From the NCBI RefSeq assembly GCF_035594765.1, contig NC_085842.1:17832782-17896781 (forward strand): a stretch of DNA of 64,000 nt. Direction: 5' to 3'. The notes under the pieces were generated by a model. That model had not been told where the DNA came from. It did no database searches and was given only the letters and a program-made list of their open reading frames with translations. Made by a program: the position numbers and the translations under genes. Numbering within the stretch: the first letter of the stretch is position 1; each line of letters starts with the position of its first letter. This DNA is from Anolis carolinensis (Eukaryota). Of the stretch, positions 14,967-56,432 are shown in pieces.

Positions 14967-16385
14967 CTTAGCTTTAACATGAAGAACTTTCACACACAGG
15001 AGCTTTAAAACACGAGGCTTCTCTCAAACAGGTTTACCTCAGACTGACTGAGGAGTTCCCTCACTGAGGCAAAAACTACTACCAACAGGCTTCGGCCTAG
15101 TCACTCTCCTCAAGGCGACGCTAGCTTTGGCCCACTCACTCTGACAGGCTTCGGCCTACACTTCTGTAATCCAAAATACCCAGTTAATATTTAATATTTC
15201 TGACAACCATTGCTCCCCAACCTCACAGAACATTAAAGGTAACCTGTCAGTCCAGGCAACAGAGCAGAGCAGATCGGAGCAGGGCATTCATCCCCAACAG
15301 AAAGAGAATGTATCAACATCGGGTGAAGTCCCATGGCTCCCTTTTCCGAGAAGGAGGAACACAGACTTCGGAGGGAGATACAACAAAAGCACCCAACACA
15401 AGCAGGCTCTTCATTGAGAAATCCCCTGCTGCCATAGCTTCTCTCCAAAGCACCATTCAGCTAAGGAAGGGGAATCTGAATTCAGAGTTTTGTTAGAAGG
15501 GTGTCACTGATTTTCACATTTCAGTCTTGCACATGACTGCTACAAAGGAGGGGCTGTAGGTACCATAAGCCAGAAAAATAGTAAACTATTGCCTATGTAG
15601 CTTTGCCTGTGCATATGCCCCTCCCTTCTTGTGAGCTGGCGCCTTTCTCCAGAATGTTCCAAGACCCAAAATTAGCTTGAAATCAACAAGTTAGGTCATT
15701 GGTATCACTTGTGCCAAGTAGGTGTGGAAGGTGAGGAAGACCCTCAGCCATTGGTTAATTTTAGATAAGCCGAGATATAAAATTCTTTGTTTGCTACACA
15801 TATGTTGCGACGGCCATTTGCATGGTACGGACCCACAAAATGGGTACCTACGGCTGTTTTGCCTTTGTGATAATAATAAAAGGCTTGTTTTGTTGCTCTC
15901 CTGGAATTCTCTCCTTTACTTCCCCTCTGGGCTAGTCTCCAACAGGGCAAATATAATGGAATAATAAGGAGATATACCCACCCAGCCTTTCTCCAGTACA
16001 ACTGACTTAACTCTGTGGTGCAGATTTTCATCCACCTTGTTAGAATAAGTAGAACCAAAAAAAAAGAGCCCAAAATACATTTGGTATGCTTGAAATTTTG
16101 ATGGCGTACTTGATATCCAACTTATGCCTTTGCTCCTCAATCCATTTCCTTGGTAGATGATGGTAAATTGTATTACTGGTTCCTGCACACTGCACGAATA
16201 TATTGCACACCCCAATTTTGGCATGGTCATTTAGCCAAAAAAGGTGTACCTTAAAATCGCATAAATACAGTAATCTCTTTAGTGGTTATTAAATTTTCTC
16301 AAACAATTGGAAGTGACTAGTTGGGAAGCTTGTATTAATTGTACAAAGGCTGTTGTTGTTTTTATTCTACAGACAAACTTATTTA

Positions 16386-18398: not shown

Positions 18399-19792
18399 TT
18401 ATAACTTTTGTCTCAGCTCTTTGGGTGGTTTTTCTCCTCTATGAATTCTCTGGTGGCTCACGAGAGATGACCTCTGATTAAAACATTTCCCACACTCCTG
18501 GCATTGGTATGGTTTCTCTCCTGTGTGGAGTCTTTTGTGCCTCCCCAAGTTTGAACTGCGAGCAAAACATTTCCCACACTCTTGGCATTGGTATGGTTTC
18601 TCTCCTGTGTGGTGTCTTTTGTGCCTCACCAATTGTGAACTGCGAGCAAACCAATTCCCACACTCCTGGCATTGGTATGGTTTCTCTCCTGTGTGGAGTC
18701 TTTTGTGGCTCACCAAGGCTGAACTGTCAGCAAAACATTTCCCACACTCCTGGCATTGGTAAGGCTTCTCTCCCGTGTGGAGTCTTTTGTGTTTCACCAA
18801 GGCTGAACTGTCAGCAAAACATTTCCCACACTCCTGGCATTGGAATGGCTTCTCTCCTGTGTGGAGTCTTTTGTGGTTCACCAAGGCTGAACTGTTAGTA
18901 AAACATTTCCCACACTCCTGGCATTGGTATGGCTTCTCTCTTGTGTGGAGTCTTTTGTGGCTCACCAAGGCTGAACTGTCAGTAAAACATTTCCCACACT
19001 CCTGGCATTGGTATGGCTTCTCTCCTGTGTGAAGCCTTTTGTGGCTCACCATGTTTGAACTGGAAGTAAAACATTTCCCACACTCCTGGCATTGGTATGG
19101 CTTCTCTCCTGTGTGGATTCTTTTGTGCCTCACCAAGCCTGAACTGTCAGCAAAACATTTCTCACACTCTTGGCATTGATATGGTTTCTCTCCTGTGTGG
19201 AGTCTTTTGTGGCTCACCAAGGCTGAACTGTCAGAAAAACATTTCCCGCACTCCTGACATTGGTATGGCTTCTCCCCTGTGTGGAGTCGTTTGTGTTTCA
19301 CCAAATCTGAATTGGAAGCAAAACATTTCTCACACTCCTGGCATTGGTGTGGCTTCTCTCCTGTGCGGAGTTTTTTGTTGCTCACCAAGTTTGAACTGTG
19401 AGGAAAACATTTCCCAGACTCCTGGTCTCTGTATGATTCCTGTCCTGTGTTAAATTTCTCGTGTTTTCCCAAGTGTGAACTCTGGATAAAAGATTTCCCA
19501 TACTCCTGGCTTATGAAATCCTCGGTTCCTTCAAAGATTTCTTGTTGGCTCAGATGTGGCAATTTGTAATCAGCAACACATTTTGCTGATACCTTCCATT
19601 TGAGATGGCTTTTCCCAGCACGGAATATTTTAGTTTGGGTAAAATATTGCCCAGATACATTGCATTTGTAGAGCATTTCTCTGGCAGAACCTTCATCTTC
19701 TTGGTGGGTTTGCTGGTGTCTAGGAAGGCCCCCATTGTGCCCAAAAGGTTTACTGGATTCGGTGTATACATTGCTCTTCTTCCTGTTATCTG
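18399..19792 (-). CDS. Unit C, C2H2 zinc-finger exon (11 intact fingers plus degenerate N-terminal fingers)
   Basis: open frame; TGEKP linkers; cacag|cag acceptor. Confidence 0.93.
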
Positions 19793-20249
19793 CTGTGGAG
19801 AAGAAGGACAGAAACAATCATTCCTCAATGTGAGTGATAAGGACTCTAAGGTATAAATGCTGAACTCTCCCCACCCCTTGTTAAGTAAGGATTGACACTG
19901 TTTGACTGACTGGAGGCTCTAAGGGAGAACGGAGTAACAACTATGTTCCAGAGTATGCCTGTTGTTCAGCCCAGCCTGTTTTTTTTATTCTGCCTCCCTC
20001 TCCCTTTTCCCTTCACATTCAAATCCTTGCCTTTTTCTCTAGCTAAACTTTACTTTGCTACCACCCATTTCACAATCATTCCCTTCTTTTTATTTCTCTC
20101 CCCATGTGACTGTAAACAAAAAGTCCAAGCCCCAGTCATTCACAAGTACTGAACATAGAACACATTATGTTGCAGGTCACCATCTTGCAAATGACTAAGG
20201 TTAGAAATTATTTGTGTGCTGGGAGAGGTAGTGTAAAAAGAGAGCCTAA

Positions 20250-20418
20250 CTTCTGTTTTACATTTCTTTGAAGACCATGCATTATCATCGGGATTGTACT
20301 TTCTGTTTCACTTATTTATTTATTTATTTACAGTATCTTTATCTTTATTTTGGCTGAAGTAAAGCCTTTTTATTTACTTTCACTTGTGTCTAAGGCTGTT
20401 TCTGGCATAAAACCGGAC
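20250..20418 (+). mobile_element. 3' remnant of the LTR-like element seen complete at 49954-50407
   Basis: aagaccatgcattatcatc...aaaaccggac shared with unit E intron, absent from units B and D. Confidence 0.6.
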
Positions 20419-21169
20419 TGTTAGCCTGGTTGGCTGGAAGGAAAAACAAGGTTAAATTTCACCCCCAGAAAAACATGTATAGCTCCGTCTGCGTATCTGA
20501 TGCCAGGGGAGGTTTCTTCTTTTTGATGCTTCACTCTCCGGCCCCACTCTCCAGCCAATCAATCTGTGCAGTGACTCTTAATAGATTTCCAAGAAGCCCG
20601 AATTGCTGGGCAGAAGCATGTAAGCAGACATCAAGAGCAAATCGGCTTTTGCAAAACAACTCTTTTCAATCATTTTCCATACTCCTTTTGGCTTCAGGCA
20701 TGGCGTGGCTTTCCAAGCCGTCCAAGGGTACACAGGATGCAAAACCAGGTGGCTGTAAAAATGTGCCTGAAGTCAGGAGAGTTTTGCTGAGTTACCTTCT
20801 GAAATCTGCTCCCCCCTCCCCTGCCTCTCTCTCTCAAACACACTCACAGAGAGAGAGAGATAGTGTGACTGATCTGGGATGATCACTGGTGAGAGGTTTT
20901 CCAGGGAGCCCAGTTGCTGCGAGGAAGTGTGGTACTCTTGGACTAGACTCCAGTTATGGAAGTCTTCCCACTGGAGTCCGAATTGGTGCTAAGATTGCTG
21001 TTGCTCAGACACCAAGTCAATATTACTCTTATGTCATATATTTCTAACATAAGCCCTGCCTTGAGAACTTTCAGTGATTGTGATGATTTAGGATCCTGCT
21101 CCCACTAGGGAACTGCTGATTGGGATACTGCATTTCGAAATAGAAATCCCATCAGTGAGGAAGCCTTAC

Positions 21170-21296
21170 CAAGAGAGTCCACAATCCCACGAATCTCCTC
21201 CATGATCTGCATGTGCAATACTATCTGATCAGGATTCAGGAGAACCCACTCCTCCAGGGAGAAATGGACAGCCACGTCCTCAAAGGCGATTGGGCC
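21170..21296 (-). CDS. Unit C, KRAB-A exon (127 nt)
   Basis: GPIAFEDVAVHFSLEEWVLLNPDQ; AG/GT boundaries. Confidence 0.88.
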
Positions 21297-22365
21297 CTGG
21301 TGGAAAAAAAAATCCTTCTCACATAAGTGCTATCAAGAAAAATAATTACAAGAAAATCTTTAAAATAGATGTACATTCTTGTTGGGTTTTTGAAAGAGAA
21401 AGGGCTATGGCTTCCATGCCATAGTATAAGATTTGTAGAGACAACCGGTTTGCCACCGTAACAACAATTTCTTAATTGATATTTAGAATCAGAAATAGAA
21501 TGTGGATATGTTCCAACTTTTATTGTTGTGCCCAGAACTGGACACAGTGTTATTCCAGGTGAGGTCTCACCAAAGCAGAAAGGTAACCATGACTTCCCTT
21601 AATGTAGACACTACATTCCTTTGGATGCTCATGTTCAATTTCTGGTCCTCTAAAACTCCAAGATGACTTTCACATGAACTGTTGTCGAGCCACGTGTCAC
21701 CCATCCTGTATCTGTGCATTGCATATTTCCTGCCTTAGTGTACTATCCTACATTTCTCCTTCTTGAAATTAATTTTGTTCATTTTCACCCAGCTCTGTAA
21801 TCTGTTAAGGCCATTTTGAATTTTCATCCTGTCTCTGGAGCATTCGCTATTCATCTTAGTTTGGTGTCATCTGGAAATATGATACGCATGCCCTCTAAAC
21901 CTTCATCCAAGTCATTAAGAAAGATGCTGAACACTACTGAGCCCTGAAAAGAACCCTGCGGCACCAGGGATTCAGTCACTCAACCAATTACTAATTCACC
22001 TCACACTAGTGTCATCTAGCCCATTTTTACTAGTTTGTAAGATCATGGAAGGCCTTGCCAAAGGCCTTAAAGAAGTCTAGATGTGCTACTTCAACTAATA
22101 ATAGTCCCCTTCGAGGTGAGAAGGGCGGTATATAAATACTGTAAATAAATAAATAAATAAATAAATAAACTTTATTTATATCCCGCCACTATGTCCCCTA
22201 AGAGACTCGGGGGAGCTCACTTGTTGGCACTATTTACAATTGTGCCTTCAGTATCTCACTTTTAAGAAACTGTTTTCTGTTTCAATAGATGTTTGATGAT
22301 TGTGCTTGGAATAAATGATACCCAGGCAGTTCCAGTCCTCCTCTCCCAGGAATCCTTCTGCTTAC

Positions 22366-22436
22366 CTGATTCAGTTCCACTCCATCACAAAGGGGAAGAA
22401 ATGACTGAGGATTCAGCAACAACATCGTTCCAGCCC
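22366..22436 (-). CDS. Unit C, second linker exon (71 nt)
   Basis: AG/GT boundaries, phase 1 to 0. Confidence 0.78.
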
Positions 22437-23019
22437 CTGGAAGAGAGAGCAAGGTGTGGAAAGCTGGTCACATAAACATGTCTCAGGGTGACAATGATGA
22501 TCCTATAAAGAAACCCAGGAGGAAATGACCCTTAGAACACAGGGGGCATTCTCCAGCCCAGTATTTGTGGCACAAGTTCCAATGGATCATCTGATCATTG
22601 TTGTAGTCGTTGTTATTGTTGTATGAGTAGATTTTGTGCATTTATTCCATACACGTCATTTATCTATGACAACATTTTCCCATTTCTCAGTTTTCCTCCT
22701 TTCTAAATCATCCACTCATTTATCGAATATATTTTAGTTCTGTTCACTCTTTTCTTTTCTCCCCCCACTCCATACCCATACTCAATTTCCATTATAATTT
22801 TAACTTCATCCATGAGCTCTGCTTTTCCCACCTCAGTACAATATTTACATTGGCTTCTCTACTTTTATCCATTATATACCTGTATAATCATCTCATGGCC
22901 AAATGATCCTGCATGTGCACTGTCTCAAGCTCAAACTGATTGTGGATGTGCTACAATCCCCCCGAGGGGAATTTACACTGGCACAAAACACCAAAACTCC
23001 CTGAAGGGTTTGTTCCTAC

Positions 23020-23146
23020 CCTGCAATGCTGCAGCTCCATCTTCTTTCTGCTTCAGCTCTTTCTGCCTGAGACTCTGGATGGTGACCGATTGACATTTCT
23101 CTGATGCAGGGAAATTAGACTGGACTTCAATACAGTTGTTTTGGGC
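23020..23146 (-). CDS. Unit C, first linker exon (127 nt)
   Basis: AG/GT boundaries, open frame. Confidence 0.8.
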
Positions 23147-23479
23147 CTGAAAGAACACAGAGAAGTTCAGAGATAGTATGGAGAAAGATTAGAATTTTTT
23201 TTCCAAAGGTGCAGAAACTGCATTCTGAGATTGGCCATATTCCAACTTCCATCATTTTCAATGTAATATCTGGGGTCAATAATTTTGAGGTGAGCAGCAA
23301 CCAAGCTTACAGTGGATATGAAGAAGACAGCAGGAGGGGCAGAGCAGGTGGGAAAGAGGCAGAGGGAGCAGAGTCTGGCTTGCCCCCCACATCGGTCCCA
23401 TCTTGGAAGAAAGGCAGGACATACTTTTAATCTATCCATCAGTCGCAAAGTTAGTGAAACCAAGAGGAAATGCTCTCAC

Positions 23480-23860
23480 CTGTTCTTCCCGCCTCTTGTC
23501 CTCTGCCCGACTCAGGAGGAAGCCTTCTGCCAGGGCCACCGCCTGGGAACAGGTCTCTGCCCCACACTCTCGGACCCAGCTCCCCATCTCTGGGGGCAGG
23601 AGGCTCAGGAACTGCTCCAGGATCACCAGGTCCAGCATCTCAGCCTTGGTGTGTTGCTCTGGCTTCAGCCACTGGCGGCAGAGATCGTGGAAGTGGCTGC
23701 AAACCTCTCTGGGTCCCTCGCCCTCTTGGTAGGAGGACTGCCTGAAGCGCTTGTGGTGTGTGTGCATATTCATGAACGTCTGCGTAGTACTTTCCGCGGA
23801 TTCCCCACTGCTCTCAGGAGTCCTGCCTGCTTCAGGTCCAGGTGAGTTGGGTTTCTCCAT
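23480..23860 (-). CDS. Unit C, SCAN exon coding part (acceptor 23984)
   Basis: SCAN domain; 381 nt. Confidence 0.9.
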
Positions 23861-25380: not shown

Positions 25381-26961
25381 GAATCATAGAGTTGGAAGAG
25401 ACCTCATGGGCCATCCAGTCCAACCCCATTCTGCCAAGAAGCAGGAAATCGTATTCAAAGCACCCCCGACAGATGGCCATCCAGCCTCTGCTTAAAAGCC
25501 TCCAAAGAAGGAGCCTCCACCACAGTCCGGGGGAGAGAGTTTCACTGCCAAACAGCCCTCACTGTGAGGAAGTTCTTCCTGATGTTCAGGTGGAATCTCC
25601 TTTCCTGTAGTTTGAAGCCACTGTTCTGTGTCCTAGTCTGCAGGGCAGCAGAAAACAAGCTTGCTCCCTCCTCCCTATGACTTCCCCTCACGTCTTGATC
25701 CATGGCCCTCATCATGTCTCCTCTCAGCCTTCTCTTTTGCAGGCTAAACATACCCATCTCTTTAAGCCGCTCCTCTTAGGGCTTGTTCTCCAGACCCTTG
25801 ATCATTTTAGTCGCCCTCCTCTAGACACATTCCAGCTTGTCAACATCTCCCTTCAACTGCGGTGTCCAGGACTGGACAGTGTGATTCCAGGTGTGGTCTG
25901 ACCAAGGCAGAATAGAGGGGTAGAATGACTTCCGTGGATCTAGACACTAAACTCCTATTTATGCAGGCCAAAATCCCATCGGCTTTTTAAGCAGCCGCAT
26001 CACATTGCTGGCTCATGTTCACCTTCCTCCCTATGAGAACTCCAAGATCTTTTTCTCACGTACTGCTGTCTAGCCAGGTGTCCCCCATTCTGTATCTTTG
26101 CATTTCATTTTTTCTGTCTAAGTGAAGTATCTTGCATTTGTCCCTGTTGAACTTCATTTTGTTAGTTTCGGCCCATCTCTCTAATCTGTCAAGATCGTTT
26201 TGAATTCTGTTCCTCCCAGTTTGGTGTCGTCTGCAAACTTGATGATCATGCCTTCTAACCCTTCGTCTAAGTCGTTAATAAAGATGTTGAACAGAACCGG
26301 GCCCAGGACGGAGCCCTGCGGCACTCCACTTGTCACTTCTTTCCATGATGAAGACGACGCATTGGTGAGCACCCTTTGGGTTCGTTCGCTTAGCCAGTTA
26401 CAGATCCACCTAACCGTAGTTTTGTCTAGCCCACATTTTACTAGTTTGTTTGCCAGAAGGTCGTGGGGGACTTTGTCGAAGGCCTTACTGAAATCCAGGT
26501 AGGCTACATCCACAGCATTCCCTGTATCGACCCAACTCGTAACTCTATCAAAAAAAGAGATCAGATTAGTCTGGCATGACTTGTTTTTGGTAAATCCGTG
26601 TTCACTATTAGCGATGACCGCATTTGTTTCTAAGTGTTTGCAGACCACTTCCTTAATGATCTTTTCCAGAATCTTGCCTGGTATCGACGTGAGGCTGACC
26701 GGACGGTAATTGTTTGGGTCGTTCTTTTTTCCCTTCTTGAAGATAGGGACCACATTTGCCCTCCTCCAATCTTCTGGGACTTCTCCCGTTCTCCAAGAAC
26801 TCTTAAAGATAATTGCCAGTGGTTCCGAAATAACCTCAGCTAGTTCCTTCAATACTCTTGGAAGTAGTTGATCTGGCCCTGGGGACTTGAATTCGTTTAG
26901 AGCGGCCAGGTGTTCTTGGATGACTTCTTTCCCTATTTGGGGTTGGATTTTCCCTAATCCT
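25381..26961 (-). mobile_element. Young CR1 LINE, 5'-truncated, with internal deletion near 26210
   Basis: [46 protein letters not shown]; CR1 3' tail. Confidence 0.92.
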
Positions 26962-27146
26962 GTGGACAAGTCTACATAGGGACCACCAAACGCACCAGCA
27001 TTGCCCAGACATGAATCAAGGAACGTGAAAGACACTGCAGACTAACTCAACCAGAGAAGTTAGCCGTAGCAGAGCACTTGATGAACCAACCTGGACACAG
27101 AATATTATTTGAGAACACAGAAATGCTGGATCACTCTAACAACTAA
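26962..27146 (+). mobile_element. Penelope-like GIY-YIG fragment
   Basis: similar to 32430-32610 (YIGTTK...AVAEH). Confidence 0.7.
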
Positions 27147-44646: not shown

Positions 44647-45797
44647 CAGTCAGTCCAGGGAGCAGAGCAGAGCAGATCATCCATCTACAACAGAAAGAGA
44701 ACGTCTCACCCAGGGGCAATTCTGACTGCTCTCTTTTCCCAAGGAGGAGGAACACATACTTGGGTGGGGGATACAACAAAAGCACCCAACACAAGCAGGC
44801 TCTTCCTTGTCAACGGCCTTAGAGAAATCACCTGCTGCAATAGCTTTTCTCCAAAGCACCCTTCTGCTAAGGCAGGGGAATCTGAATTCAGTTTGGTTAG
44901 AAGGATTTCACTGATTTTCACATTTCAGTCTTGCAGATGACTACAAAGGAGGGGCAAATATAGTGGAGTAAGTAGATATACCCATCCAGGGCCGGCCCTA
45001 GGTAATTTTCAAGTGTAAGCAAACAGTATTTTGCCCCCTCCCAAAAAAAACAATCACTAAAAAATAAAAGGTAGGTGAACATAATAGACAAAAGAGTAAC
45101 CTTACAAACTAGAAATTTATTTACATCAGTATGTTCATATAGTTATATTACATAGAATTAACATAAATTAACCTTTTTTAGAATGCAAATATTTTATCAA
45201 ACTTATTTTATTTATTTATTTACAGCATTTTTACACCCCCCCTTCTCACCCGAGGAGACTCAAAGAGGCAAAAAAATCTGGCAAAATTCAATGCCAATAA
45301 CAAGTTCAAAAATAAAGCATAACACATTTAAAATAATGAAACATTACTTAATAGAACAGTATACAAAACTTAAAACATAAATATTTAAATCCATTCATCC
45401 ATGGACCTTGCATGTAAACTTTAATTCAGGCCGTGTCGAGTCACAGAACTCATTCATTAAATGCTTTAAAATATGGAACGCTTCACGAATTAGCAACAAT
45501 TTTAAGTTCCTGGTCATGCTGTCTCGTCAGATTTCTCAGACTTTGGGCTTACTAATAACAGACAACTAAATTGCATGCTTGTTGCGTCTGTCAATCAGTT
45601 TTGTTTTAGAGAATGCAGCCCCATGAGAATAGACACCTTCTTTGTAAGGAAGCAAACTCTTGTCCTTCAGAAGTGCCATGCCAGCCTGGCCCATGGCAAT
45701 AGGTGTGGCAACATAGCTAGCCTCTGGCCTCTTCACTTGAGTGGATATTTTAACATCCCGTGTGTCTTAACACAAATTAACTTGAACACCTTTAAAA

Positions 45798-48125
45798 TTA
45801 AAAAAAGATTTTTCTAGCTTTCCGTTTTGAAAACTCGCGCACTAGTAAGTCTGTTTCCATTTCATCCAACAAGTCTTTTTCAATGGCCAAGGTTGCTAGT
45901 TCACTCACGCGCTCTTGGCCCGAAGATGATCTTAAGTAGTTCCTTATACATTTTAATTTTGAAAAACTCATTTCATCGCTGGCCATTGATACTGGAAGCG
46001 TTAACAGAATTCTCAATGCAATATAAACATTTGGGAAAGTATCTACATAACCACGTTTGGTTAGGAAAGACAAGGCTTCAGCTGGGTTGCTTCCAGGGGG
46101 CAGCATAGGTGCAAATATTTGTAGCTCATCAAACAGATCATCACCGTTCACATCGCAGTCTTCTCCATCGCTCAAAACGGTTTGAAGATGTTGACAGTCA
46201 TTCTTCAATTCTGTTTCATTCAAACTTTTCCCAAGCTTTGAAATATCATACAGAAATTTGAAACTTTCGCTATGGTTTTCCATTAGCTCACATCTCTCCT
46301 TTAATGAGGATATTGCTGTGTCAAGCACAACAAAGAAGAAGTTGACTTTAAAAGATTCTTTATCAGAATGTACAGCTTCATCTTCACTCTCACTGGAATG
46401 TGCAGCATCACCTTCACTCTCATTGGAATGTGCAGCTTCATCTTCACTCTCACTTGAATGTGCAGCTTCATCTTCACTCTCATTGTTTACTTCTCTTGGT
46501 CGAACTAGCGTTTCTTTTTCAAAGTCAGCAGCAACATCAATTTTTTCTGCAAGTTCCTTTGCATCCTTAATGACGCTATTTAGACCTTCATCAGATCTCA
46601 TCTTTTCTAGAAATGATTGTACACTCTTAATAAGATTCATAGAACTTTGAAGATTATTTGTGACTTTTTGCAACCGTTTACTCACCATATTTATCTTATG
46701 CAGGATCTCATGCCATGTCACTAAACAGCATAGAAACTTGAAGCTTTTCAGTTTCTTTAGAAGCGTGATAGCAGTGTTCCTACCAAATGCACCAAATTTC
46801 TGCTCTTGAGAAGCTTCATATAAGGCATCATATACTTCTTCAATGTGGAACCTCAAAGGCAACAATGCCTCGATTTTACTTTCCCACCTAATAATGCAGA
46901 GTGGTCTGACTTTGAGAACTGAAACATGCTTTGACAAAATACTCCATCTTTCAGTAGAACTTGAAAAAAAGTTAAAGATTTCTTGTATGGTGCTGAAACA
47001 GTCTACTGCAACGCTGCAAGACAGAGCTGCATCATTTAAGACCAAGTTCAGGGAGTGGTTTCCACATGGTACATAAAAGGCTCTCGGATTTAACTCAAGG
47101 ATCCTCTTCTGAACTCCAGAATGCTTTCCCTTCATTGCAGAAGCATTGTCATAGCCCTGGCCTCTCATGGTTTTTAAAGGAATGCCTCGTGTTTCTAACT
47201 CTTTGAGTAAAATTTCTGTGAGGCCTTCACCTGAAGAATGGGTAACAGGAACAAAGCCTAAAAAATGTTCCTTAACTGAGACATCTTCATTTGCTTCAAT
47301 TTTTACGAATTTTACCACCAACGTCATTTGTTCGGTGTGGCTAACATCGGGAATGCAGTCTAATCTAATCGAATAATATTTTGCCTGGTGTAGTTGTTGT
47401 AAAATATTACCCTGGATCTTGGCCGACAAGAAACTAACAAACTCGTTCTGGACATTTTTGCTCAAATAGTGAACGTGTGTTTCTTTGGAAGCGATTCTTC
47501 TCAGATGTTCGGCCATAAAAGCATCAAACTTTGCTATATGTTCTACCATTTTTAAAAAGTTGCCATTATTACGTTCAAATAGAGCCTCTTTATTCCCTCG
47601 AAATGCCAATCCTTGAGTCCCCAAAAACTGTACTACACATAGTAAGCGTTTCAGAACTTGATGCCAATGTCCAGATTCAGCATGAACAAGCCTTTCATGT
47701 TCTGCATCAATAGTTTTGTTTAAACATAAACGTGCAGAGAGTTCATGCCAAGATGTACAGTTTGTAATATGAGTATGGGATTTCTCATGACTGGTCAAAA
47801 CCTTGCCCAAGTTCTGCCAGTCAGAATACCCTTTGCTACTAGCAAGAAGAGAATTAGCATTTCCAAAAACTTTGCAAGCAAAACAAAAAACTGCATTTTT
47901 CAATTTAGAATATAGTAGCCAAATCCTGTCGACTTGCTCTCCGTTGCGCAGTTTCCTTGTATAGTGTTTTGAGGTAAATCTCCTACCCCTACTGTCCCGA
48001 GGAAAATCTTTGTCAGTGACTTGCTGAGGTCCTCGTTTCACAAGTATTTTCCGTACCTCATCATTTATTTTAGATGGCCACTCTCCACAATCATCTGAAA
48101 TCGATAATGGGTCTCTGCTTAGTTC
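45798..48125 (-). CDS. hAT transposase main exon (TTF-type zinc finger, DUF4371-like region, DDE core, hAT dimerisation region); last exon of predicted SCAN-KRAB-transposase fusion
   Basis: 775 open codons from tttttttttcag| acceptor; WLLYS..NAVFCFACKVF, LAFRG, NGNFL, SIRLDCIPDVSHTEQ, GQGYDNASAM, CGNHSLNL, RWE, PVSMASDEMSFSKLK. Confidence 0.92.
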   Translation of the reverse strand, partial: ELSRDPLSISDDCGEWPSKINDEVRKILVKRGPQQVTDKDFPRDSRGRRFTSKHYTRKLRNGEQVDRIWLLYSKLKNAVFCFACKVFGNANSLLASSKGYSDWQNLGKVLTSHEKSHTHITNCTSWHELSARLCLNKTIDAEHERLVHAESGHWHQVLKRLLCVVQFLGTQGLAFRGNKEALFERNNGNFLKMVEHIAKFDAFMAEHLRRIASKETHVHYLSKNVQNEFVSFLSAKIQGNILQQLHQAKYYSIRLDCIPDVSHTEQMTLVVKFVKIEANEDVSVKEHFLGFVPVTHSSGEGLTEILLKELETRGIPLKTMRGQGYDNASAMKGKHSGVQKRILELNPRAFYVPCGNHSLNLVLNDAALSCSVAVDCFSTIQEIFNFFSSSTERWSILSKHVSVLKVRPLCIIRWESKIEALLPLRFHIEEVYDALYEASQEQKFGAFGRNTAITLLKKLKSFKFLCCLVTWHEILHKINMVSKRLQKVTNNLQSSMNLIKSVQSFLEKMRSDEGLNSVIKDAKELAEKIDVAADFEKETLVRPREVNNESEDEAAHSSESEDEAAHSNESEGDAAHSSESEDEAVHSDKESFKVNFFFVVLDTAISSLKERCELMENHSESFKFLYDISKLGKSLNETELKNDCQHLQTVLSDGEDCDVNGDDLFDELQIFAPMLPPGSNPAEALSFLTKRGYVDTFPNVYIALRILLTLPVSMASDEMSFSKLKCIRNYLRSSSGQERVSELATLAIEKDLLDEMETDLLVREFSKRKARKIFF
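46366..46485 (-). repeat. 30-bp coding tandem repeat x4 (ESEDEAAHSS)
   Basis: gaatgtgcagcttcatcttcactctca units, frame preserved. Confidence 0.9.
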
Positions 48126-48562
48126 CTGAAAAAAAAATAATATGTAGTGTATGTTAACTTTTAAAAGATTTCAAAGGTTTAATGCAGTGCAGTATCAATA
48201 CCTATAATACCTTATTATGAAATCTTTAATTAAAAATGGAAATAAAATAAACCTTGTGACAGTGGCCAATCGGAAAGGTAGATTTTGCATATTAATTATA
48301 AATGTAAACCATGATAAACACAAATTATTTTATAAAATTATGGTGGCAGTTCTGAACAGATTTACTGAATGTATATGTTAATAAAATCTACCTAAAAATA
48401 GCTCTGAGATATTTTATAATAAAGAATTCTGGAAAAGTGCCCTTTTCATCCTCCACCTCCATTCCTCCCTCCTCTCAACAAGAGCTAAACAAACTGGACA
48501 GGCCTAGGCCAATTATATTTTCCTAATATGTGTACTAATAAGATAAAATTAAATCTACTTAC

Positions 48563-48912
48563 AGTTTCAATGGTTTGCGGACTAGATGGCAGGACTGCAT
48601 CTCCTAATAAATCATCATCCACATCTTCGGTATCGGTCCCAGTTAGGTCAATAATGGAAGGTGCTAATGGTGTTGCTGTGGTCACTGTAAGATGGTCTTG
48701 ACTTGCTGGTGGTCCAGGTGGAAGATCAGATATTGGTATCTTGTCGTTATCGTCATGAGCTGATTCAGTCAATTTAGTTGGCTCTGTGTTTCTTGTTGCA
48801 CATGATGGTGAGGTGGTTTGCAATGCTTTAGATTGATTCTCATCTTCTTTGCAATGCTGCAACTTCCTTTTACGATGAAATGCTCCTGATGGCTTTCCTT
48901 GCTGGACATTTT
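48563..48912 (-). CDS. hAT transposase N-terminal exon (350 nt, phase 1 to 0)
   Basis: tttttttaacag| acceptor, act|gtaagt donor; KPSGAFHRKRK basic motif typical of N-termini of this transposase group; in frame with 48125 exon. Confidence 0.75.
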
Positions 48913-49476
48913 CTGTTAAAAAAACCCAACTCATCATATAAGGAAGGGAGATGCCACAGAACAGCTTTCAGCTTACAACAACACAGCAGAGATACAGCCT
49001 GCAGCTCCATCCAAGTACTAACTATGGCTGATTCTGCGTAGCTTCCAAAATCAGATGGGAGTTGGTACTTTTAGGGTATTTAGGTCCCAAGATGTATATA
49101 TCAGCCCTCTTTTACCAAGAGTAAAAGAAATACAAATTAAAACTTTGGAAAACAAGAGTGAATACAAAGAAACACTAATTAGCGGGGGGGGGGGACAATT
49201 AACATTAATAATAATGATACCCCCAGCTGTCCATCATTCAGGCAGCTCCGCCCCCTTCCCTTCCCAGCTGAGCGCTCTTGAGCCCAGTGGCGATGGCCAG
49301 GCCTCAGTGCTGAACGAGAATGGCTCTCTCTACCTGGGCCAGCTGAGCACCCCCCCCCCCCCCCCAAGTTGCTGGAAGCCAAAGGAATCACACGTGTTCA
49401 TTGAGAAATGTTAAATGTATCATCTATAGCACCAACATGTCCACAACCTGCAATTCCTCTGTTGTAATTTATTTTA

Positions 49477-50407
<931 letters not shown>

Positions 50408-51142
50408 GTTAGCCTGGTTGGCTGGAAGGAAAAACAAGGTTAAATATCACCCACATAAAAACATGTATAGCTCCGTCTGCAGATCTGAAGCCAGGGGAAG
50501 TTTGTTCTTTTTTATGCTTCACTCTCCGGCCCCACTCTCCAGCCAATCAATCTGCGCAATGACTCTTAATAGATTTCCAAGAAGCCCGAGTTACTGGGCA
50601 GAAGCATGTAAGCAGACATCAGGAGCAAGTCAGCTTTTGCAAAAAAAACTCTTTTCAATCATTTTCTGTACTCCTTTTGGCTTCAGAGATGGCATGGCTT
50701 TCCAAGCCATCCAAGAGTACACAGGATGCAAAACCAGCTTGCTGAAAAAGTGTGCCTGCAGTCAGGAGAGGTTTGCTGAGTTACCTTTTGAAATCTAGTC
50801 CCCTTGCCTCCCCTGCCTCTCTTTCTTTCTCAAACACACTCGGAGAGAGAGAGTGAGATAGTGTGACTGATCTGGGGTGATCACTCTTGAGAGGTTTTCC
50901 AAGGAGCCCAGTTGCTGCAAGGGACTCCAGTTATGGAAGTCTTCCCACTGGAGACCAAATTGGTGCTAACATTGCTGCTGCTCAGACACCAAGTCAATAT
51001 TACTCTTAAGTCATATATTTCTAACATAATCCCTGCCTTGAGAACTCTCAGTGATTGTGATGATTTAGGATCCTGCTCCCACCAGGGAACTGCTGATTAG
51101 GATACTGCAAAATAGAAATCTCCATCAAGGAGGGAGCCATAC

Positions 51143-51269
51143 CAAGACAGTCCAAAATCCCACGAATCTCTTCCATGATCTGCATATGCAAGACTTTCTG
51201 ATCAGGATTCAGGAGAACCCACTCCTCCAGGGAGAAATTGACAGCCACATCCTTAAAGGCGATTGGGCC
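51143..51269 (-). CDS. Unit E, KRAB-A exon (127 nt)
   Basis: GPIAFKDVAVNFSLEEWVLLNPDQKVLHMQIMEEI; ccag| acceptor, |gtatg donor, open. Confidence 0.85.
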
Positions 51270-52178
51270 CTGGTGGAAAAAGAAAAATAATCCTTCTCAC
51301 ATAAGGGCTATCAAGAAAAATAATAACAAGAAAATCTTTAAAGTAGATTTTCATTTCCTGTTGTTTGAAAGAGAAAGGGCTATCTTCCATGCCATAGTTT
51401 AAACTTTGTAGAGACAACCAGTTTGCCACCATAACATCCATTTCTTAATTGATATTTAGAATCAGAAATGGAATCTGATTCTTAAAATATACAACTTTTA
51501 TTGTGGTGCCCAGAACTGGACACAGTGTTATTCCAGGTGAGGTCTCACCAAAGCAAAAAGAAGGTCATCATGACTTCCCTGAATGTAGACACTACATTCC
51601 TTTGGATGCAGCCCAAAATCCCATAGGCTTTTAAGCCGCTGCATCAAACTGTTGGCTCATGATCAACTTGTGGTCTACTAACACTTCAAGATGCCTTTCA
51701 TATTAATTGTTGTCAAGCCAGGTGTCACCCATCCTGTATCTGTGCATTGTGTATTTCCTGCCTTAGTGTACTATCCTACATTTCCCCTTGTTAGAAATTA
51801 ATTTCGTTAATTTTCACCCAGCTCTGTTATCTGATAAGACCGTTTTGAATTCTGATTCTGTGTTCTGGAGTATTAGCTATTCCTCCTAGTTTGGTGTCAT
51901 CTGGAAATATGATCCGCATGCCCTGTAAACCTTCATCCAAGTCATTAAGAAAGATGTTGAACAGTACTGAGCCAGGACAGAACCCTGCAGCACCAAGTAG
52001 TCATTTCTTTCAAGGGTGAAGAGGAACCATTGGTGAGTACCCTTTGGATTCAGTTACTCAACCAATTACAAATCCACCTCACACTTGTATCATCAAGGCC
52101 ATTTTTACTAGTTGTTTGTAAGACCATGGGAGGCCTTGCCAAAGGCCTTAAAGAAGTCAAGATGTGCTACATCCACTA

Positions 52179-52179
<1 letters not shown>

Positions 52180-52232
<53 letters not shown>
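52180..52232. repeat. (AAT)n microsatellite
   Basis: direct reading. Confidence 0.95.
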
Positions 52233-52237
<5 letters not shown>

Positions 52238-53039
52238 AGGGACTTGGGGTGGCTCACAAAAAGCACTCCAAAGTGCAGCACACATAAAATACACACTACA
52301 TAAGCATATAAAACAATGACAACATAAATTTACACAACACTTTCACCTACAAACGTCACATAAATTCCATAAAATGCAGCAGTACCTCAAGATAAAAATG
52401 ATTGTCTTCCAGTATCAATCTAAACTGCTGGAGTGAAGCAATCACTAAGTTCTCAAGTCTACATTCCCTTCCTCTACTAAGCTTGTAACAAGGTACAGGA
52501 AAAACCATAATCAGAACATGGGAATCCAAACATGAACATGAATCCAAAACCAAGACCGTAGAAATGTCTTAAAAGCATGAATCCAAACTCCCAAGATCTT
52601 AGACTAAAACATGAACTTGAAGCAAAACTCAAGATCCTCACTGCTATGCAGTGTTGCCTGATTTGAATTCTAAAGGAAACAATTCCCTGATTTAAGGTCT
52701 GCAAGCCATGAAGTCATACCTGTGACCTTGACTCCCTTGCCTGTGATATTTTTCACACTGTTGTTTCTCACGGTGTCTTTGTGACTTCCTTATTTTGTTT
52801 GCTTCTTCCCTAATATGAAGCCTAAGATTCCTGCTGACTGCAGGTGTATTTTCATGAGAACTTTCTCGCCCATCCTTATCTGGGGTTGCTATGAGACAAC
52901 CAGACGAAAAGCTTTTGCCAGTCACTGCATCTCCCTCGTTGCTGGCCTCTGACGCAGTTTTACTTTCAAGCCCATTCTCAGAGACAGGATCTATACTCCC
53001 CTCATTTCCCACATTGAAAAATCCATCCAGTCATCTTCA

Positions 53040-54290
53040 TCATCTGGAGCTGCTGCAACAGGGGGATTGTCCGCTCCTTGTCTCCAGCCCCAGTGAGCAA
53101 CCTGGGAGAAGCTCTTTGGACCAGCTGAAGTTTCTGAGCACTCTTCAGAGGCAGTCCCACATAGAGTGCATTACAGTAATCCAGATGTGATGTAACTAAG
53201 GCACATACCACCATTGCCAGATCTGGCTTCTCAAGGAAAGGGCGCAGTTGGCGCATAAGTGTACAAAGGCCCTCCTGGCCACCTTCAACACCTGGAACTC
53301 CAGGTTCAGCGCCAAGTCCAGGAGAACCCCCAAACTGAACCTGTGTCTTCAGGAGGGAATGTGACTCCATACAGCACAGGCTGGATTCCTATTTGCTAAT
53401 CTGCCTTTTGATTGACCAGGAGTACCAGTGTCATATCTGGAATAGGTTTCAAATTGTTTTCCTTCATCCAGTAAATTACTGATGGCAGCCAACTGGTTTA
53501 GGGTCAGGATAGCTTCCTTGGCTTTAGGTGGAAAAGAGTTAGAGTTGGGTATCATCTGAATATAGGTGACACTGCACGCCAAAACTCTGGATGACTGTTC
53601 CCAGTGGTTTCATGTATATGTTGAACAGCATGGGGGACAAAACCGAGCCTGTGGAACCCCACAAATTAACAGCCAGGGGTTCGAAAAGGAGTCCCGCAGC
53701 ACCACCTTCTGGGTATGGCCCTCCAGAAAGGACTGGAGCCCATCCTAATAAGACAACCCAAAAGGAGTCCATGGTCAATAGTATCGAAAGCTGCTGAGAA
53801 ATCCAGGAGAAGCAACAGAGAAACACACCCCACCCCCCTCTAGCTCTCTGCAGAGGTCATCCACCAAGGAGACCAAAGCTGTCTCTGTTCCATGGCCAGG
53901 CCTAAAACCAGACTAAACCTCTTGAGATGGACCATCTTAATTGGTCCCCCACCCCTGCAGAGGTTTGGATTCCCAGAGAGTCTAAACCTGACCATGTAGT
54001 GATGAGTCCACAACAATGGAACTATAATCATGTTCCTCCACACTATCATCACCACCAATCCATTCTGCACAGAAAACAAGGTCCAAAGTGTCTCCAGCAG
54101 CATGGATAGGGCAAGACACCACCTGGGACAGACCCATGGTTGTCATGGAGGCCATGAAGTCATGAGCCATTCCTGAAAGGGCGGTCTCTGCATGGACATT
54201 GAAGTCTCCCAGCACGATTTGCCACTGAGACCCCAACTCCAATCCCGAGACCATCCCGGCTAACTCAGGAAGGGACACTGTTGAGCAAAC
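53040..54290 (-). mobile_element. Degenerate L2 LINE fragments
   Basis: VLGDFNVH endonuclease motif, GSVLSPMLFNIYM, YSDDTQL, LDYCNALYVGLP. Confidence 0.85.
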
Positions 54291-54721
54291 CCTACTGTTT
54301 GCTCTTTTTTTCTCCTTCTACTGACACAACCAAAGAACCCCCTTTTACTGTTTTTAATTTCTCTGGAAAGCCTGGGCTCATTTTCTGCTTTGGCTTGTGA
54401 GACCTTTTCCCTATTTATGCTAGTTAGTCATTTGAATTCTTTTTTGGTAATTCCTACCCCCCCCCCACCCTTTTCAATTTCTTCTACACCTCTCTTTTAA
54501 GTCTTAGCTCAGCTGAAAGATCTTTGGACATTTATTCTGGTTTCTTTAGATATCTCTTATTTTTCCCCTCTTGTTGGCGCTATTTACAATTGTGTCTTCC
54601 GTATCTCACTTTTAAGAAACTCCCATTCTATCTTTTCTGTTGCAAGAGATGTTCGATGACTGTGCCTGGAATCAATGACAGGCCGCTCCAGTCCTTCTCT
54701 CCCAGGAATCCCTCCGCTTAC

Positions 54722-54765
54722 CTGATTCAGTTCCACTCCATTTGTTGACAACATCATTCCAGTCC
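54722..54765 (-). CDS. Unit E, second linker exon (44 nt; in-frame 27-nt shorter than C/D)
   Basis: ttccag| and cag|gtaag; GTGMMLSTNGVELNQ. Confidence 0.75.
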
Positions 54766-55321
54766 CTGGAAGAGAGAGCAAGGTATGGAAAGCTGATCAG
54801 GGATGACAATGATGGTCTATAAAGAAACCTATGAGAAAATGACCCTAAGAACACAGGGCATTCTCCAGCCCAGTATTTGTGGCCCATGTTCCAATTGATC
54901 ATCTGATCATTAATTTTGTTGTTGTTGTTGTTGTATCAGTAGATTTTGTACATTTATTTCATACATTTCCCCACCCCCTTCCTATTTGTCACTCTTTCTT
55001 CTTTCTATATTATCCACTTATTTTTCTAATATATCTTAGTTCTATTCATTCTTTTCTTTCTCCCCCATCCCATAACCATATCACAATTTCCATTATAACT
55101 TTTCCTTCATCCATGAGCTCAGCTTTTCCCTTCTCTATATAATATTTGCATTGGCTTCTCTACTTTTATCCATTCCGTACCTGTATAATCATCTCATGGA
55201 CAAATGATCCTGCACGTGCACCTTCTCAAGCTCAAACTGATTGTGTATGTGCTACAATCCCCGCAAAGGGGAATTTACACTAGCATAAAACACCAAAACT
55301 CCCAGAAGAGTTCCTTCTTGC

Positions 55322-55448
55322 CTTGCAAAGTTGCCGCTCCATCCCCTTTCTGCTTGAGGTCTTTCAGCTGGAGCCTCTGGGTGGTGTCTGAAGGAGATTT
55401 CTCTGATGTAGGGACATCACGCTGGACTTCAATACAGTTATTTTGGGC
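55322..55448 (-). CDS. Unit E, first linker exon (127 nt, GC donor)
   Basis: open frame; donor aag|gcaaga at the position of paralogous agg|gtaaga. Confidence 0.7.
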
Positions 55449-55787
55449 CTGAAAGAAAACAGAGAAATTCAGAAGTAGTGTGGAGAAAGATTAGAAAAGG
55501 ATTTTTTTCCAAATGTGAAGAAACTGCATTCTGAGACTAGTTGTATTCCAAATCCCATCATTTTCAATGTAATGTGTGAGGTCAACAATTCTGAGTTGTG
55601 CAGCAACTGAGCTGACAGTGGATATGGAGGTGACAGCAGGAGGGGCAGAGCAGGTGGGAAAAGAGGAAGAGGGAACAAGCTTTTGGCTTATTCCCCATTT
55701 TGGTCGGATCTTGGAAGAAAAGCAAGATTTAGGTTTAATCTATCCATCAGTCCCAAGGTTAGTGGAACCAACAGAAAATGCTCTCAC

Positions 55788-56420
55788 CTGTTCTTCCCGC
55801 CTCTTGTCCTCTGTCTGACTCAGGAGGAAGCCTTCCGCCAGGGCCACCGCCTGGGAAGAGGTCTCTGCCCCACACTCTCGGACCCAGCTCCCCATCTCTG
55901 GGGGCAGGATGCTCAGGAACTGCTCCAGGATCACCAGGTCCAGCATCTCAGCCTTGGTGTGTTGCTCTGGCTTCAGCCACTGGCGGCAGAGATCGTGGAG
56001 GTGGCTGCAAACCTCTCTGGGTCCCTCACCCTCTTGGTAGAAGGACTGTCTGAAGAGCTGGCGCTGTATGTGCGCATTTAGCAATGTCTGCGTAGTTCTT
56101 TCCCCGGATTCCCCACTGCTCTCGTGGGCCCTGCCTGCTTCAGGTCCAGGTGAGTTGGGTCTCTCCATGTTGGAACCACCCTCAGGTCCAGGTGAATTGG
56201 ATCTCTCCATGTTGGAACCACCCTCAAGTCCAGGCGAATTGGGTTTCTCCATGTTGGAACCACCCTCAAGTCCAGGTGAATTGGATCTCTCCATGTTGGA
56301 ACCACCCTCAAGTCCAGGCGAATTGGGTTTCTCCATGTTGGAACCACCCTCAGGTCCAGGTGAGTTGGGTCTCTCCATGTTGGAACCACCCTCAGGTCCA
56401 GGTGAATTGAGTCTCTCCAT
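55788..56420 (-). CDS. Unit E, SCAN exon coding part with 7x14-aa N-terminal repeat (acceptor 56545)
   Basis: SCAN domain intact; first ATG 56420. Confidence 0.88.
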
Positions 56421-56432
56421 GTTGGAACCACT
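56139..56432 (-). repeat. 42-bp coding tandem repeat x7 ([14 protein letters not shown])
   Basis: ATGs at 42-nt spacing from 56420 to 56168; single copy in units A-D. Confidence 0.93.

What the first reader, a model, noticed from the sequence alone, without database searches (positions are those of the whole stretch)
45798..56420. Predicted SCAN-KRAB-hAT transposase fusion gene: a zinc-finger array replaced by a captured transposase
Seen in sequence: six minus-strand exons, 56420-55788 (SCAN, 633 nt), 55448-55322 (127), 54765-54722 (44), 51269-51143 (KRAB-A, 127), 48912-48563 (350) and 48125-45798 (2328), join to 3609 nt, one open frame of 1202 aa plus stop. The KRAB exon ends in phase 1 and the transposase acceptor at 48912 starts in phase 1 (G|AA = Glu). 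The zinc-finger exon that B, C and D use at this position is acceptor-less and frameshifted in E, yet the other E exons and ~2.7 kb of transposase are stop-free. Established: KRAB/SCAN-transposase fusions made by exon capture exist in vertebrates (ZNF862 KRAB-hAT, PGBD1 SCAN-piggyBac, POGK, SCAND3/ZBED9). Inference: this is a lineage-specific fusion born inside a KRAB-ZNF cluster, with its unfused sister paralog (unit C) still alongside. It could act as a transcription factor or transposon repressor directed to hAT ends. I cannot tell whether it has already been annotated.
Basis: partly seen in the sequence, partly recalled or inferred. Interest (0 to 1): 0.96.

Follow-up and report, generated by a model that had tools for sequence, protein, structure and literature searches.

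The report
Lizard SCAN-KRAB-hAT transposase fusion gene
In the green anole, a zinc-finger gene swapped its DNA-binding exon for a captured hAT transposase; the fusion is real, spliced and under selection in three copies, but it is already annotated and belongs to a published fusion family (KHATD2).

Summary
Confirmed. The window is Anolis carolinensis (CM069368.1), and the six-exon, 1202-aa model equals RefSeq XP_062829388.1. The fusion family is published as KHATD2 (Cosby et al.; KRAB-TTF-hAT, one gene, selection untested). This gene is one of three open-frame copies; the other two lie 13 kb and about 120 kb away. New here is the birth route. The hAT inserted about 2.4 kb downstream of the zinc-finger exon of a unit-C-like gene (empty site and 8-bp duplication recovered). 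The zinc-finger acceptor was lost, and KRAB splices to the element's own acceptor. A 1-nt deletion, shared by all three copies and absent from seven free elements, joins the frames and kills the native start. One probable RNA run shows the KRAB-hAT junction with this copy's diagnostic base. After duplication the transposase has dN/dS 0.42-0.65, no stops and no frameshifts. The catalytic triad survives, but about 15 conserved residues changed. Most likely it is a regulator aimed at hAT ends. Binding, repression and SCAN inclusion were not shown. The scan's earlier notes concern this same DNA.

The parts
55788..56420 (-). Exon 1: start codon, 42-nt tandem repeat (56140-56431) and SCAN domain
   Evidence: open in both paralogues
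55322..55448 (-). Exon 2, linker; GC donor (GT in all paralogues)
54722..54765 (-). Exon 3 (44 nt); carries the Met at which RefSeq starts the two paralogues
51143..51269 (-). Exon 4, KRAB-A box, ends in phase 1; constrained among copies (omega about 0.16, P 0.006)
49509..49952 (-). Broken remnant of the C2H2 zinc-finger terminal exon: no acceptor, stops and frameshifts
48913..49365 (-). Truncated left part of the hAT. Left TIR and the element's putative first exon are deleted in this copy; its intron end supplies the acceptor
48563..48912 (-). Exon 5: hAT N-terminal exon. Native ATG at 48909-48907 is out of frame (46-aa dead end) because of a 1-nt deletion near 48896
   Evidence: spliced to KRAB in run X2
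48126..48562 (-). The element's own phase-0 intron, also present in free copies
45798..48125 (-). Exon 6: TTF-type zinc finger, DUF4371, RNase H-like core and C-terminal dimerisation region. D256, D326 and E718 kept (exon numbering); Hermes fold
46366..46482 (-). 30-nt acidic repeat expansion, found only in the fusion copies
44987..44998 (+). Intact right terminal inverted repeat, CAGGGCCGGCCC
44979..44986 (-). Right copy of the 8-bp target-site duplication
15975..15982 (-). Empty insertion site downstream of unit C, about 2.4 kb past its zinc-finger stop
18399..23860 (-). Unit C: intact SCAN-KRAB-C2H2 gene, the unfused sister lineage

Best explanation
A real, young host-transposase fusion gene of the KHATD2 family, one of three clustered copies. 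Birth (steps shown, order partly inferred): a hAT inserted in sense orientation about 2.4 kb downstream of a unit-C-like SCAN-KRAB-ZNF gene. The zinc-finger exon lost its acceptor, so the KRAB donor splices to the element's own acceptor 3 nt before its ATG. A 1-nt deletion puts the phase-1 KRAB exon in frame and kills the native start. The gene then triplicated and has been kept by purifying selection. Function (inferred): the transposase half replaces the zinc fingers as the DNA-targeting and multimerising module and is probably no longer an efficient nuclease. It brings KRAB (and SCAN) to the ends of cognate hAT elements and MITEs, repressing them or nearby promoters. Odds: real selected fusion about 0.9; regulator aimed at hAT ends, given that, about 0.65.
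For: Model identical to RefSeq. Three open copies of 1202, 1201 and 1205 aa. KRAB-hAT joint 51143>48912 with GT-AG ends in run X2, contig depth 29.8, carrying this copy's base at 48897. The 1-nt deletion is in 3/3 fusions and 0/7 free elements. A free-element transcript uses the same acceptor in phase 0 (loose end in X1; matching donor in L010). Empty site and 8-bp TSD recovered. KRAB omega about 0.16. About 15 substitutions at near-invariant columns are shared by all copies, including T258I, F612C and R719M. Cognate elements with the same TIR are recently mobile: five copies 99.7-99.9% identical on four chromosomes. Four other KRAB-transposase fusions repress reporters through their cognate TIR (bioRxiv 10.1101/2020.05.07.082677).
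Against: No binding or repression data exist for this protein; the four fusions tested by Cosby et al. are all Tc1/mariner type. The KRAB has no B box and a diverged C-terminal motif (MEEIR where the usual consensus is MLENY, from my own knowledge); B-box-less KRABs are split between strong and weak KAP1 binders (PMC6745500). Constraint is strongest in the catalytic/C-terminal half (omega 0.29) and not significant in the N-terminal DNA-binding part (0.67, p 0.2). The junction is listed in one of four runs only, on assembled contigs of a run guessed to be RNA, and intron 4 pieces at depth 11-17 point to retention or read-through. The omega values come from paralogues in one genome with signs of gene conversion and from my own codon-model script.
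Confidence: 0.6

Rival explanations
1. Real selected protein, but it acts mainly by protein contact: a poison subunit that co-assembles with active transposase multimers, or a scaffold through SCAN, with little KAP1-type silencing.
For: The strongest constraint is on the core and C-terminal dimerisation half (omega 0.29). The whole fold is kept (pLDDT 88, Hermes match E 7e-10). The KRAB is diverged and lacks a B box.
Against: The KRAB exon is itself constrained (7 synonymous to 3 non-synonymous changes). The active subfamily sampled is only 69% identical in protein.
Confidence: 0.18
2. The fusion keeps nuclease or transposase activity and serves as a domesticated DNA-cutting or mobilising enzyme.
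For: D256, D326, E718, the CxxH motif and the RW motif are intact in all three copies. The catalytic half is the most constrained part.
Against: 19-20 departures from 169 near-invariant columns against 3 in the two best-conserved free copies, several beside the catalytic residues (I254R, T258I, G328A, R719M).
Confidence: 0.08
3. The working product is the shorter KRAB-hAT protein (about 946 aa, starting in exon 3), and the SCAN exons are a relaxed or minor 5' part. This is compatible with the best explanation for the rest of the gene.
For: RefSeq starts both paralogues in exon 3. KHATD2 is listed without SCAN. GC donor in exon 2. SCAN omega about 1 on 15 changes. SCAN-side junctions not seen.
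Against: Exons 1-3 are open in all three copies with only in-frame indels (42, 3, 3 nt). RefSeq includes SCAN for this copy.
Confidence: 0.25
4. Neutral by-product: a recent insertion whose frame has not yet decayed.
For: The parent family is recently active. The stem branch has omega about 1.0.
Against: The insertion predates three duplicates that differ by roughly 5-10% in non-coding DNA but 2-4% in hAT exons. No stops where 6-9 are expected and no frameshifts. The hAT exon is 14-19% diverged from the free copies sampled.
Confidence: 0.05

Closest known systems
KHATD2 (Cosby et al., bioRxiv 10.1101/2020.05.07.082677, Table S3; A. carolinensis GeneID 100558310)
   Same: Same species, same hAT family and same KRAB + TTF + DUF4371 + Dimer_Tnp_hAT make-up. 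Their consensus starts at the acceptor equivalent to 48125 and contains part of the acidic repeat that I find only in the fusion copies.
   Different: Listed as one gene, without SCAN, dN/dS not tested, splice site marked at the element's internal intron. Here there are three copies, with SCAN, capture at the upstream acceptor (48912), a 1-nt deletion and a downstream insertion. The older RefSeq KRAB-hAT protein XP_008120491.1 is 98.3% identical to the neighbouring copy and 95.3% to this one, so KHATD2 is probably the neighbour; the GeneID could not be mapped.
RefSeq XP_062829388.1 ('zinc finger MYM-type protein 1', A. carolinensis)
   Same: Identical 1202-aa protein at the identical locus.
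   Different: The name hides the fusion; no function is given.
KRABINER (vesper bats)
   Same: Transposon-supplied acceptor just before the ORF, plus a single-nucleotide deletion that opens the fused frame.
   Different: Mariner, not hAT; inserted in the last intron with the parent transcript kept. Here the element lies downstream of the terminal exon, which was then broken or deleted.
ZNF862 and KHATD1 (KRAB-hAT); PGBD1, KMUTD1, KMARD3 (KRAB + SCAN + other transposases)
   Same: KRAB, with or without SCAN, fused to a transposase.
   Different: Independent origins, mostly much older. No SCAN + KRAB + hAT row appears in parts 1-2 of Table S3 (part 3 not read).
Hermes transposase (PDB 4D1Q)
   Same: Best structural match of exon 6 (E 7e-10).
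   Different: TTF-type rather than BED finger, 16% identity, altered residues around the triad.

Membership tests
Host-transposase fusion (Cosby et al.) | Host and transposase domains in one open frame on separate exons | tested here: met
Host-transposase fusion (Cosby et al.) | Transcript evidence for the fusion junction | tested here: met
   Joint 51143>48912 in run X2 with a copy-specific base; one run, contigs only
Host-transposase fusion (Cosby et al.) | Splice acceptor supplied by the ancestral transposon | tested here: met
   Same AG 3 nt before the ATG in 7 free copies; used by a free-element transcript
Host-transposase fusion (Cosby et al.) | Purifying selection on the transposase part | tested here: met
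   omega 0.42-0.65 among paralogues; cross-species test not possible
KHATD2 family | A. carolinensis KRAB + TTF + DUF4371 + Dimer_Tnp_hAT from this hAT family | tested here: met
KHATD2 gene itself | GeneID 100558310 is this copy | tested here: inconclusive
   The older model is closer to the neighbour copy but mosaic; no GeneID look-up available
hAT superfamily | Short TIR and 8-bp target-site duplication | tested here: met
hAT superfamily | RNase H-like DDE core, CxxH and RW motifs, C-terminal dimerisation region | tested here: met
   the catalytic role of D256/D326/E718 is inferred from conservation and motif analogy
Autonomous mobile hAT | Two intact ends and own in-frame start | tested here: not met
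   Left TIR deleted and native ATG out of frame
KRAB-transposase repressor | Binds the cognate TIR and represses through KRAB/KAP1 | not testable with these tools
   needs reporter, ChIP and co-IP
SCAN-containing fusion | SCAN exons spliced into the same transcript | tested here: inconclusive
   Open frames and the RefSeq model support it; exon 1-2 junctions lay outside the read test and the exon 3-4 joint was not listed
hobo_AC (Novick et al., PMC3014272) | TIR TAGGCTTGMTC | tested here: not met

The most novel reading that the evidence does not exclude
A young three-gene host defence family against a hAT that is still jumping. It was born by terminal-exon replacement from an element lying downstream of the gene, remodelled its DNA-binding region before duplicating (stem omega well above 1 there, p 0.014 uncorrected), and now silences or poisons the cognate elements and the roughly 3,000 young orphan MITEs (hAT-N6/7/8_AC) whose ends differ from this TIR by about one base.
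Probability: 0.25. Interest if true: 0.7.

Novelty: new member of a known kind. Interest (0 to 1): 0.42.

Why it matters
KRAB-transposase fusions are a known route to new transcription factors, but most cases are old or single-copy. Here every step can still be read in one cluster: the unfused sister gene with the empty site, the target-site duplication, the element's own acceptor, the frame-fixing deletion (the same device as in KRABINER), three descendants under selection, and a cognate element family that is still recently mobile. That makes it a tractable test of whether such fusions start as repressors of their own parent element, and it supplies the selection evidence missing for KHATD2. 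It does not reveal a new kind of system.

Tried and rejected
A sequence search of solved structures found no hAT match; the fold search did. The left TIR and left TSD are not recoverable from the window copy and came from paralogue L003. hobo_AC was rejected as parent by its TIR. 'Orthologue in another anole at 94%' was my first reading of P0001; it is a paralogue in the same assembly. No A. sagrei transposase appears among the top 120 hits (down to 40% identity), although A. sagrei proteomes are in the database; this is absence from annotation only, within 426-1356 aa. A paper search for the Hermes residue matching R719 gave nothing usable, so the effect of R719M is inferred from 109/110 conservation. 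Runs X3 and X15 cover all bins and look like DNA, so they say nothing on splicing. A words search of the scan's notes found no other report of this fusion. Left ends of the free A. carolinensis copies lay beyond the 3-kb flanks fetched.
Full report
Observation. They sum to 3609 nt and give one open frame of 1202 aa with the stated phases. Pfam finds SCAN in exon 1, KRAB in exon 4, and DUF4371 and the hAT dimerisation domain in exon 6. All splice sites are canonical except the exon 2 donor, which is GC; all six paralogues examined have GT. The window has no N.

Identity and prior knowledge. Searching exon 6 returned Anolis carolinensis proteins first. A cluster member, RefSeq XP_062829388.1, is identical to the model, and its locus on CM069368.1 (GCA_035594765.1) equals the window over the 14 kb compared. 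Cosby et al. (bioRxiv 10.1101/2020.05.07.082677) list KHATD2, an A. carolinensis fusion with KRAB, TTF finger, DUF4371 and Dimer_Tnp_hAT, dN/dS not tested. Their consensus is this hAT family and carries part of an acidic repeat that I find only in the fusion copies. No other paper in the library names KHATD2. The older RefSeq KRAB-hAT model is 98.3% identical to the neighbouring copy and 95.3% to this one, with a central stretch matching this one. So KHATD2 is most likely the neighbour, or a collapsed mosaic; I could not map the GeneID.

Three copies. Two more copies lie 13 kb upstream (L001, just past the window edge) and about 120 kb away on the other strand (L003). RefSeq starts both in exon 3, but both have open SCAN, linker, KRAB and hAT exons giving 1201 and 1205 aa. 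Unit C is sister to the three (100/100 on SCAN-intron-exon 2; 98/96 on KRAB and flanks) and is itself an intact SCAN-KRAB-ZNF gene. A. sagrei proteins are in the database but none is among the transposase hits, which suggests an origin after that split; this rests on annotation only.

How it was born. (1) Insertion site. L003 keeps the left flank and a decayed left TIR; the window keeps an intact right TIR at 44987-44998. The 8-mers outside them match each other and a single 8-mer at 15982-15975, about 2.4 kb downstream of unit C's stop, with both flanks aligning. The element therefore landed behind the gene, not in its last intron as in KRABINER. (2) Loss of the zinc-finger exon. The window copy lacks the stretch holding C's acceptor and keeps a broken remnant; L003 and L001 lack the whole exon through other breakpoints. 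These deletions may be nested, so one ancestral loss suffices. (3) Acceptor. The AG at 48913 sits 3 nt before the native ATG in all seven free copies, and a contig in run X1 shows a free element's own first exon spliced to it in phase 0. (4) Frame. KRAB ends in phase 1, so the splice alone would be out of frame. All three fusions share a 1-nt deletion just after the ATG, absent from the seven free copies, which opens the fused frame and leaves the native start a 46-aa dead end. The order of steps 2 and 4 is not known. Cosby et al. marked the internal acceptor (48125) instead; that intron is the element's own.

Expression. The best runs hold about half of the sampled words of 45798-51300, the share that exons make up. 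Laid on 48785-54780, run X2 shows the joint 51143>48912 with GT-AG ends at contig depth 29.8, with this copy's base at 48897. Limits: contigs only, RNA status guessed, one run of four; X3 and X15 look like DNA; intron 4 pieces at depth 11-17 suggest retention or read-through. The exon 3-4 joint was not listed and exons 1-2 lay outside the stretch, so SCAN inclusion rests on RefSeq and open frames.

Selection. Non-coding DNA differs by roughly 5-10% between copies, hAT exons by 2-4%. A codon model I scripted gives omega 0.42 after duplication (p 3e-6 against 1, all topologies), 0.29 for the catalytic and C-terminal half, 0.67 (not significant) for the N-terminal DNA-binding part, and about 1.0 on the stem. 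On the stem the DNA-binding part shows an excess of amino-acid changes (p 0.014, uncorrected, few synonymous changes). KRAB is constrained (omega about 0.16); SCAN shows no signal on 15 changes. Host exons and a shared deletion at the right end group L001 with L003, while the hAT codons group this copy with L001, so gene conversion is likely and the omega values are approximate.

Protein. Exon 6 folds confidently (mean pLDDT 87.8) and matches Hermes transposase best (E 7e-10). D256, D326, E718, CxxH and RW are kept. The fusions depart from 19-20 of 169 near-invariant columns, against 3 in two free copies; about 15 departures are shared by all three, several beside the acidic residues. I infer impaired catalysis; it was not tested.

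Mechanism. Shown: architecture, junction, birth steps, constraint. Inferred: the transposase half targets and multimerises, and KRAB silences. Targets exist: five near-identical free copies with the same TIR on four chromosomes, and three young orphan MITE families of about 1,000 copies or more each with TIR CAGAGSCGGYCC (PMC3014272). Four mariner-type KRAB fusions repress through their TIR, but no hAT-type one was tested, and this KRAB lacks a B box. Rivals are poison subunit or scaffold (0.18), retained nuclease (0.08) and neutral by-product (0.05); a SCAN-less main isoform (0.25) is compatible with any of them.

Handling. Homology and family searches were run exon by exon, by reference; the joined model was not sent to any search, and that step is left out. 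Exons were joined only inside local scripts to check frames and compare with tool-returned proteins. The public protein P0121, which equals the model, was used once by id to fetch its locus.

Verdict. A real, spliced, selected fusion; already in RefSeq and a member of the published KHATD2 family, probably a sister copy of the listed gene. The added value is the triplication, the birth route and the selection evidence. New member of a known kind; interest 0.42.

Noticed in passing
L011:1878-5712 (Homalodisca vitripennis) and L012:1-4301: A full-length 3.8-kb leafhopper hAT with the same terminal repeat is 77-83% identical in DNA to the anole family over 2.2 kb: a lead for insect-lizard horizontal transfer.
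   Followed up: partly
L004-L008: Five copies 99.7-99.9% identical over more than 6.2 kb on four chromosomes, with an intact 869-aa transposase and right TIR. This autonomous family is not among the five of Novick et al. (PMC3014272), and its TIR is one base from that of their orphan MITEs hAT-N6/7/8_AC, so it may be their missing mobiliser.
   Followed up: partly
L010:2470-13462: A solitary related hAT gene on the same chromosome, spliced from its own far-upstream first exon, seen in run X1, with an open frame but 28 departures from conserved columns: possibly a second, unfused domesticate.
   Followed up: partly
window 49953-50407: LTR-like stretch abutting the zinc-finger remnant; its first part is shared with unit C up to C position 20249. 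Element identity not tested.
   Followed up: no
window 56140-56431: 42-nt coding tandem repeat (7 copies) at the start of exon 1, also in both fusion paralogues; units A-D align only to the last ~395 nt of the exon.
   Followed up: partly
window 15554-15975: Unit C carries its own ~400-nt insertion about 30 nt from the empty hAT site.
   Followed up: no
window 26181-27035: Reverse transcriptase fragment (RVT_1) between units C and D.
   Followed up: no
same genome, another piece (note s1-528577): The scan lists another candidate hAT-type fusion, onto DCTPP1; not examined.
   Followed up: no
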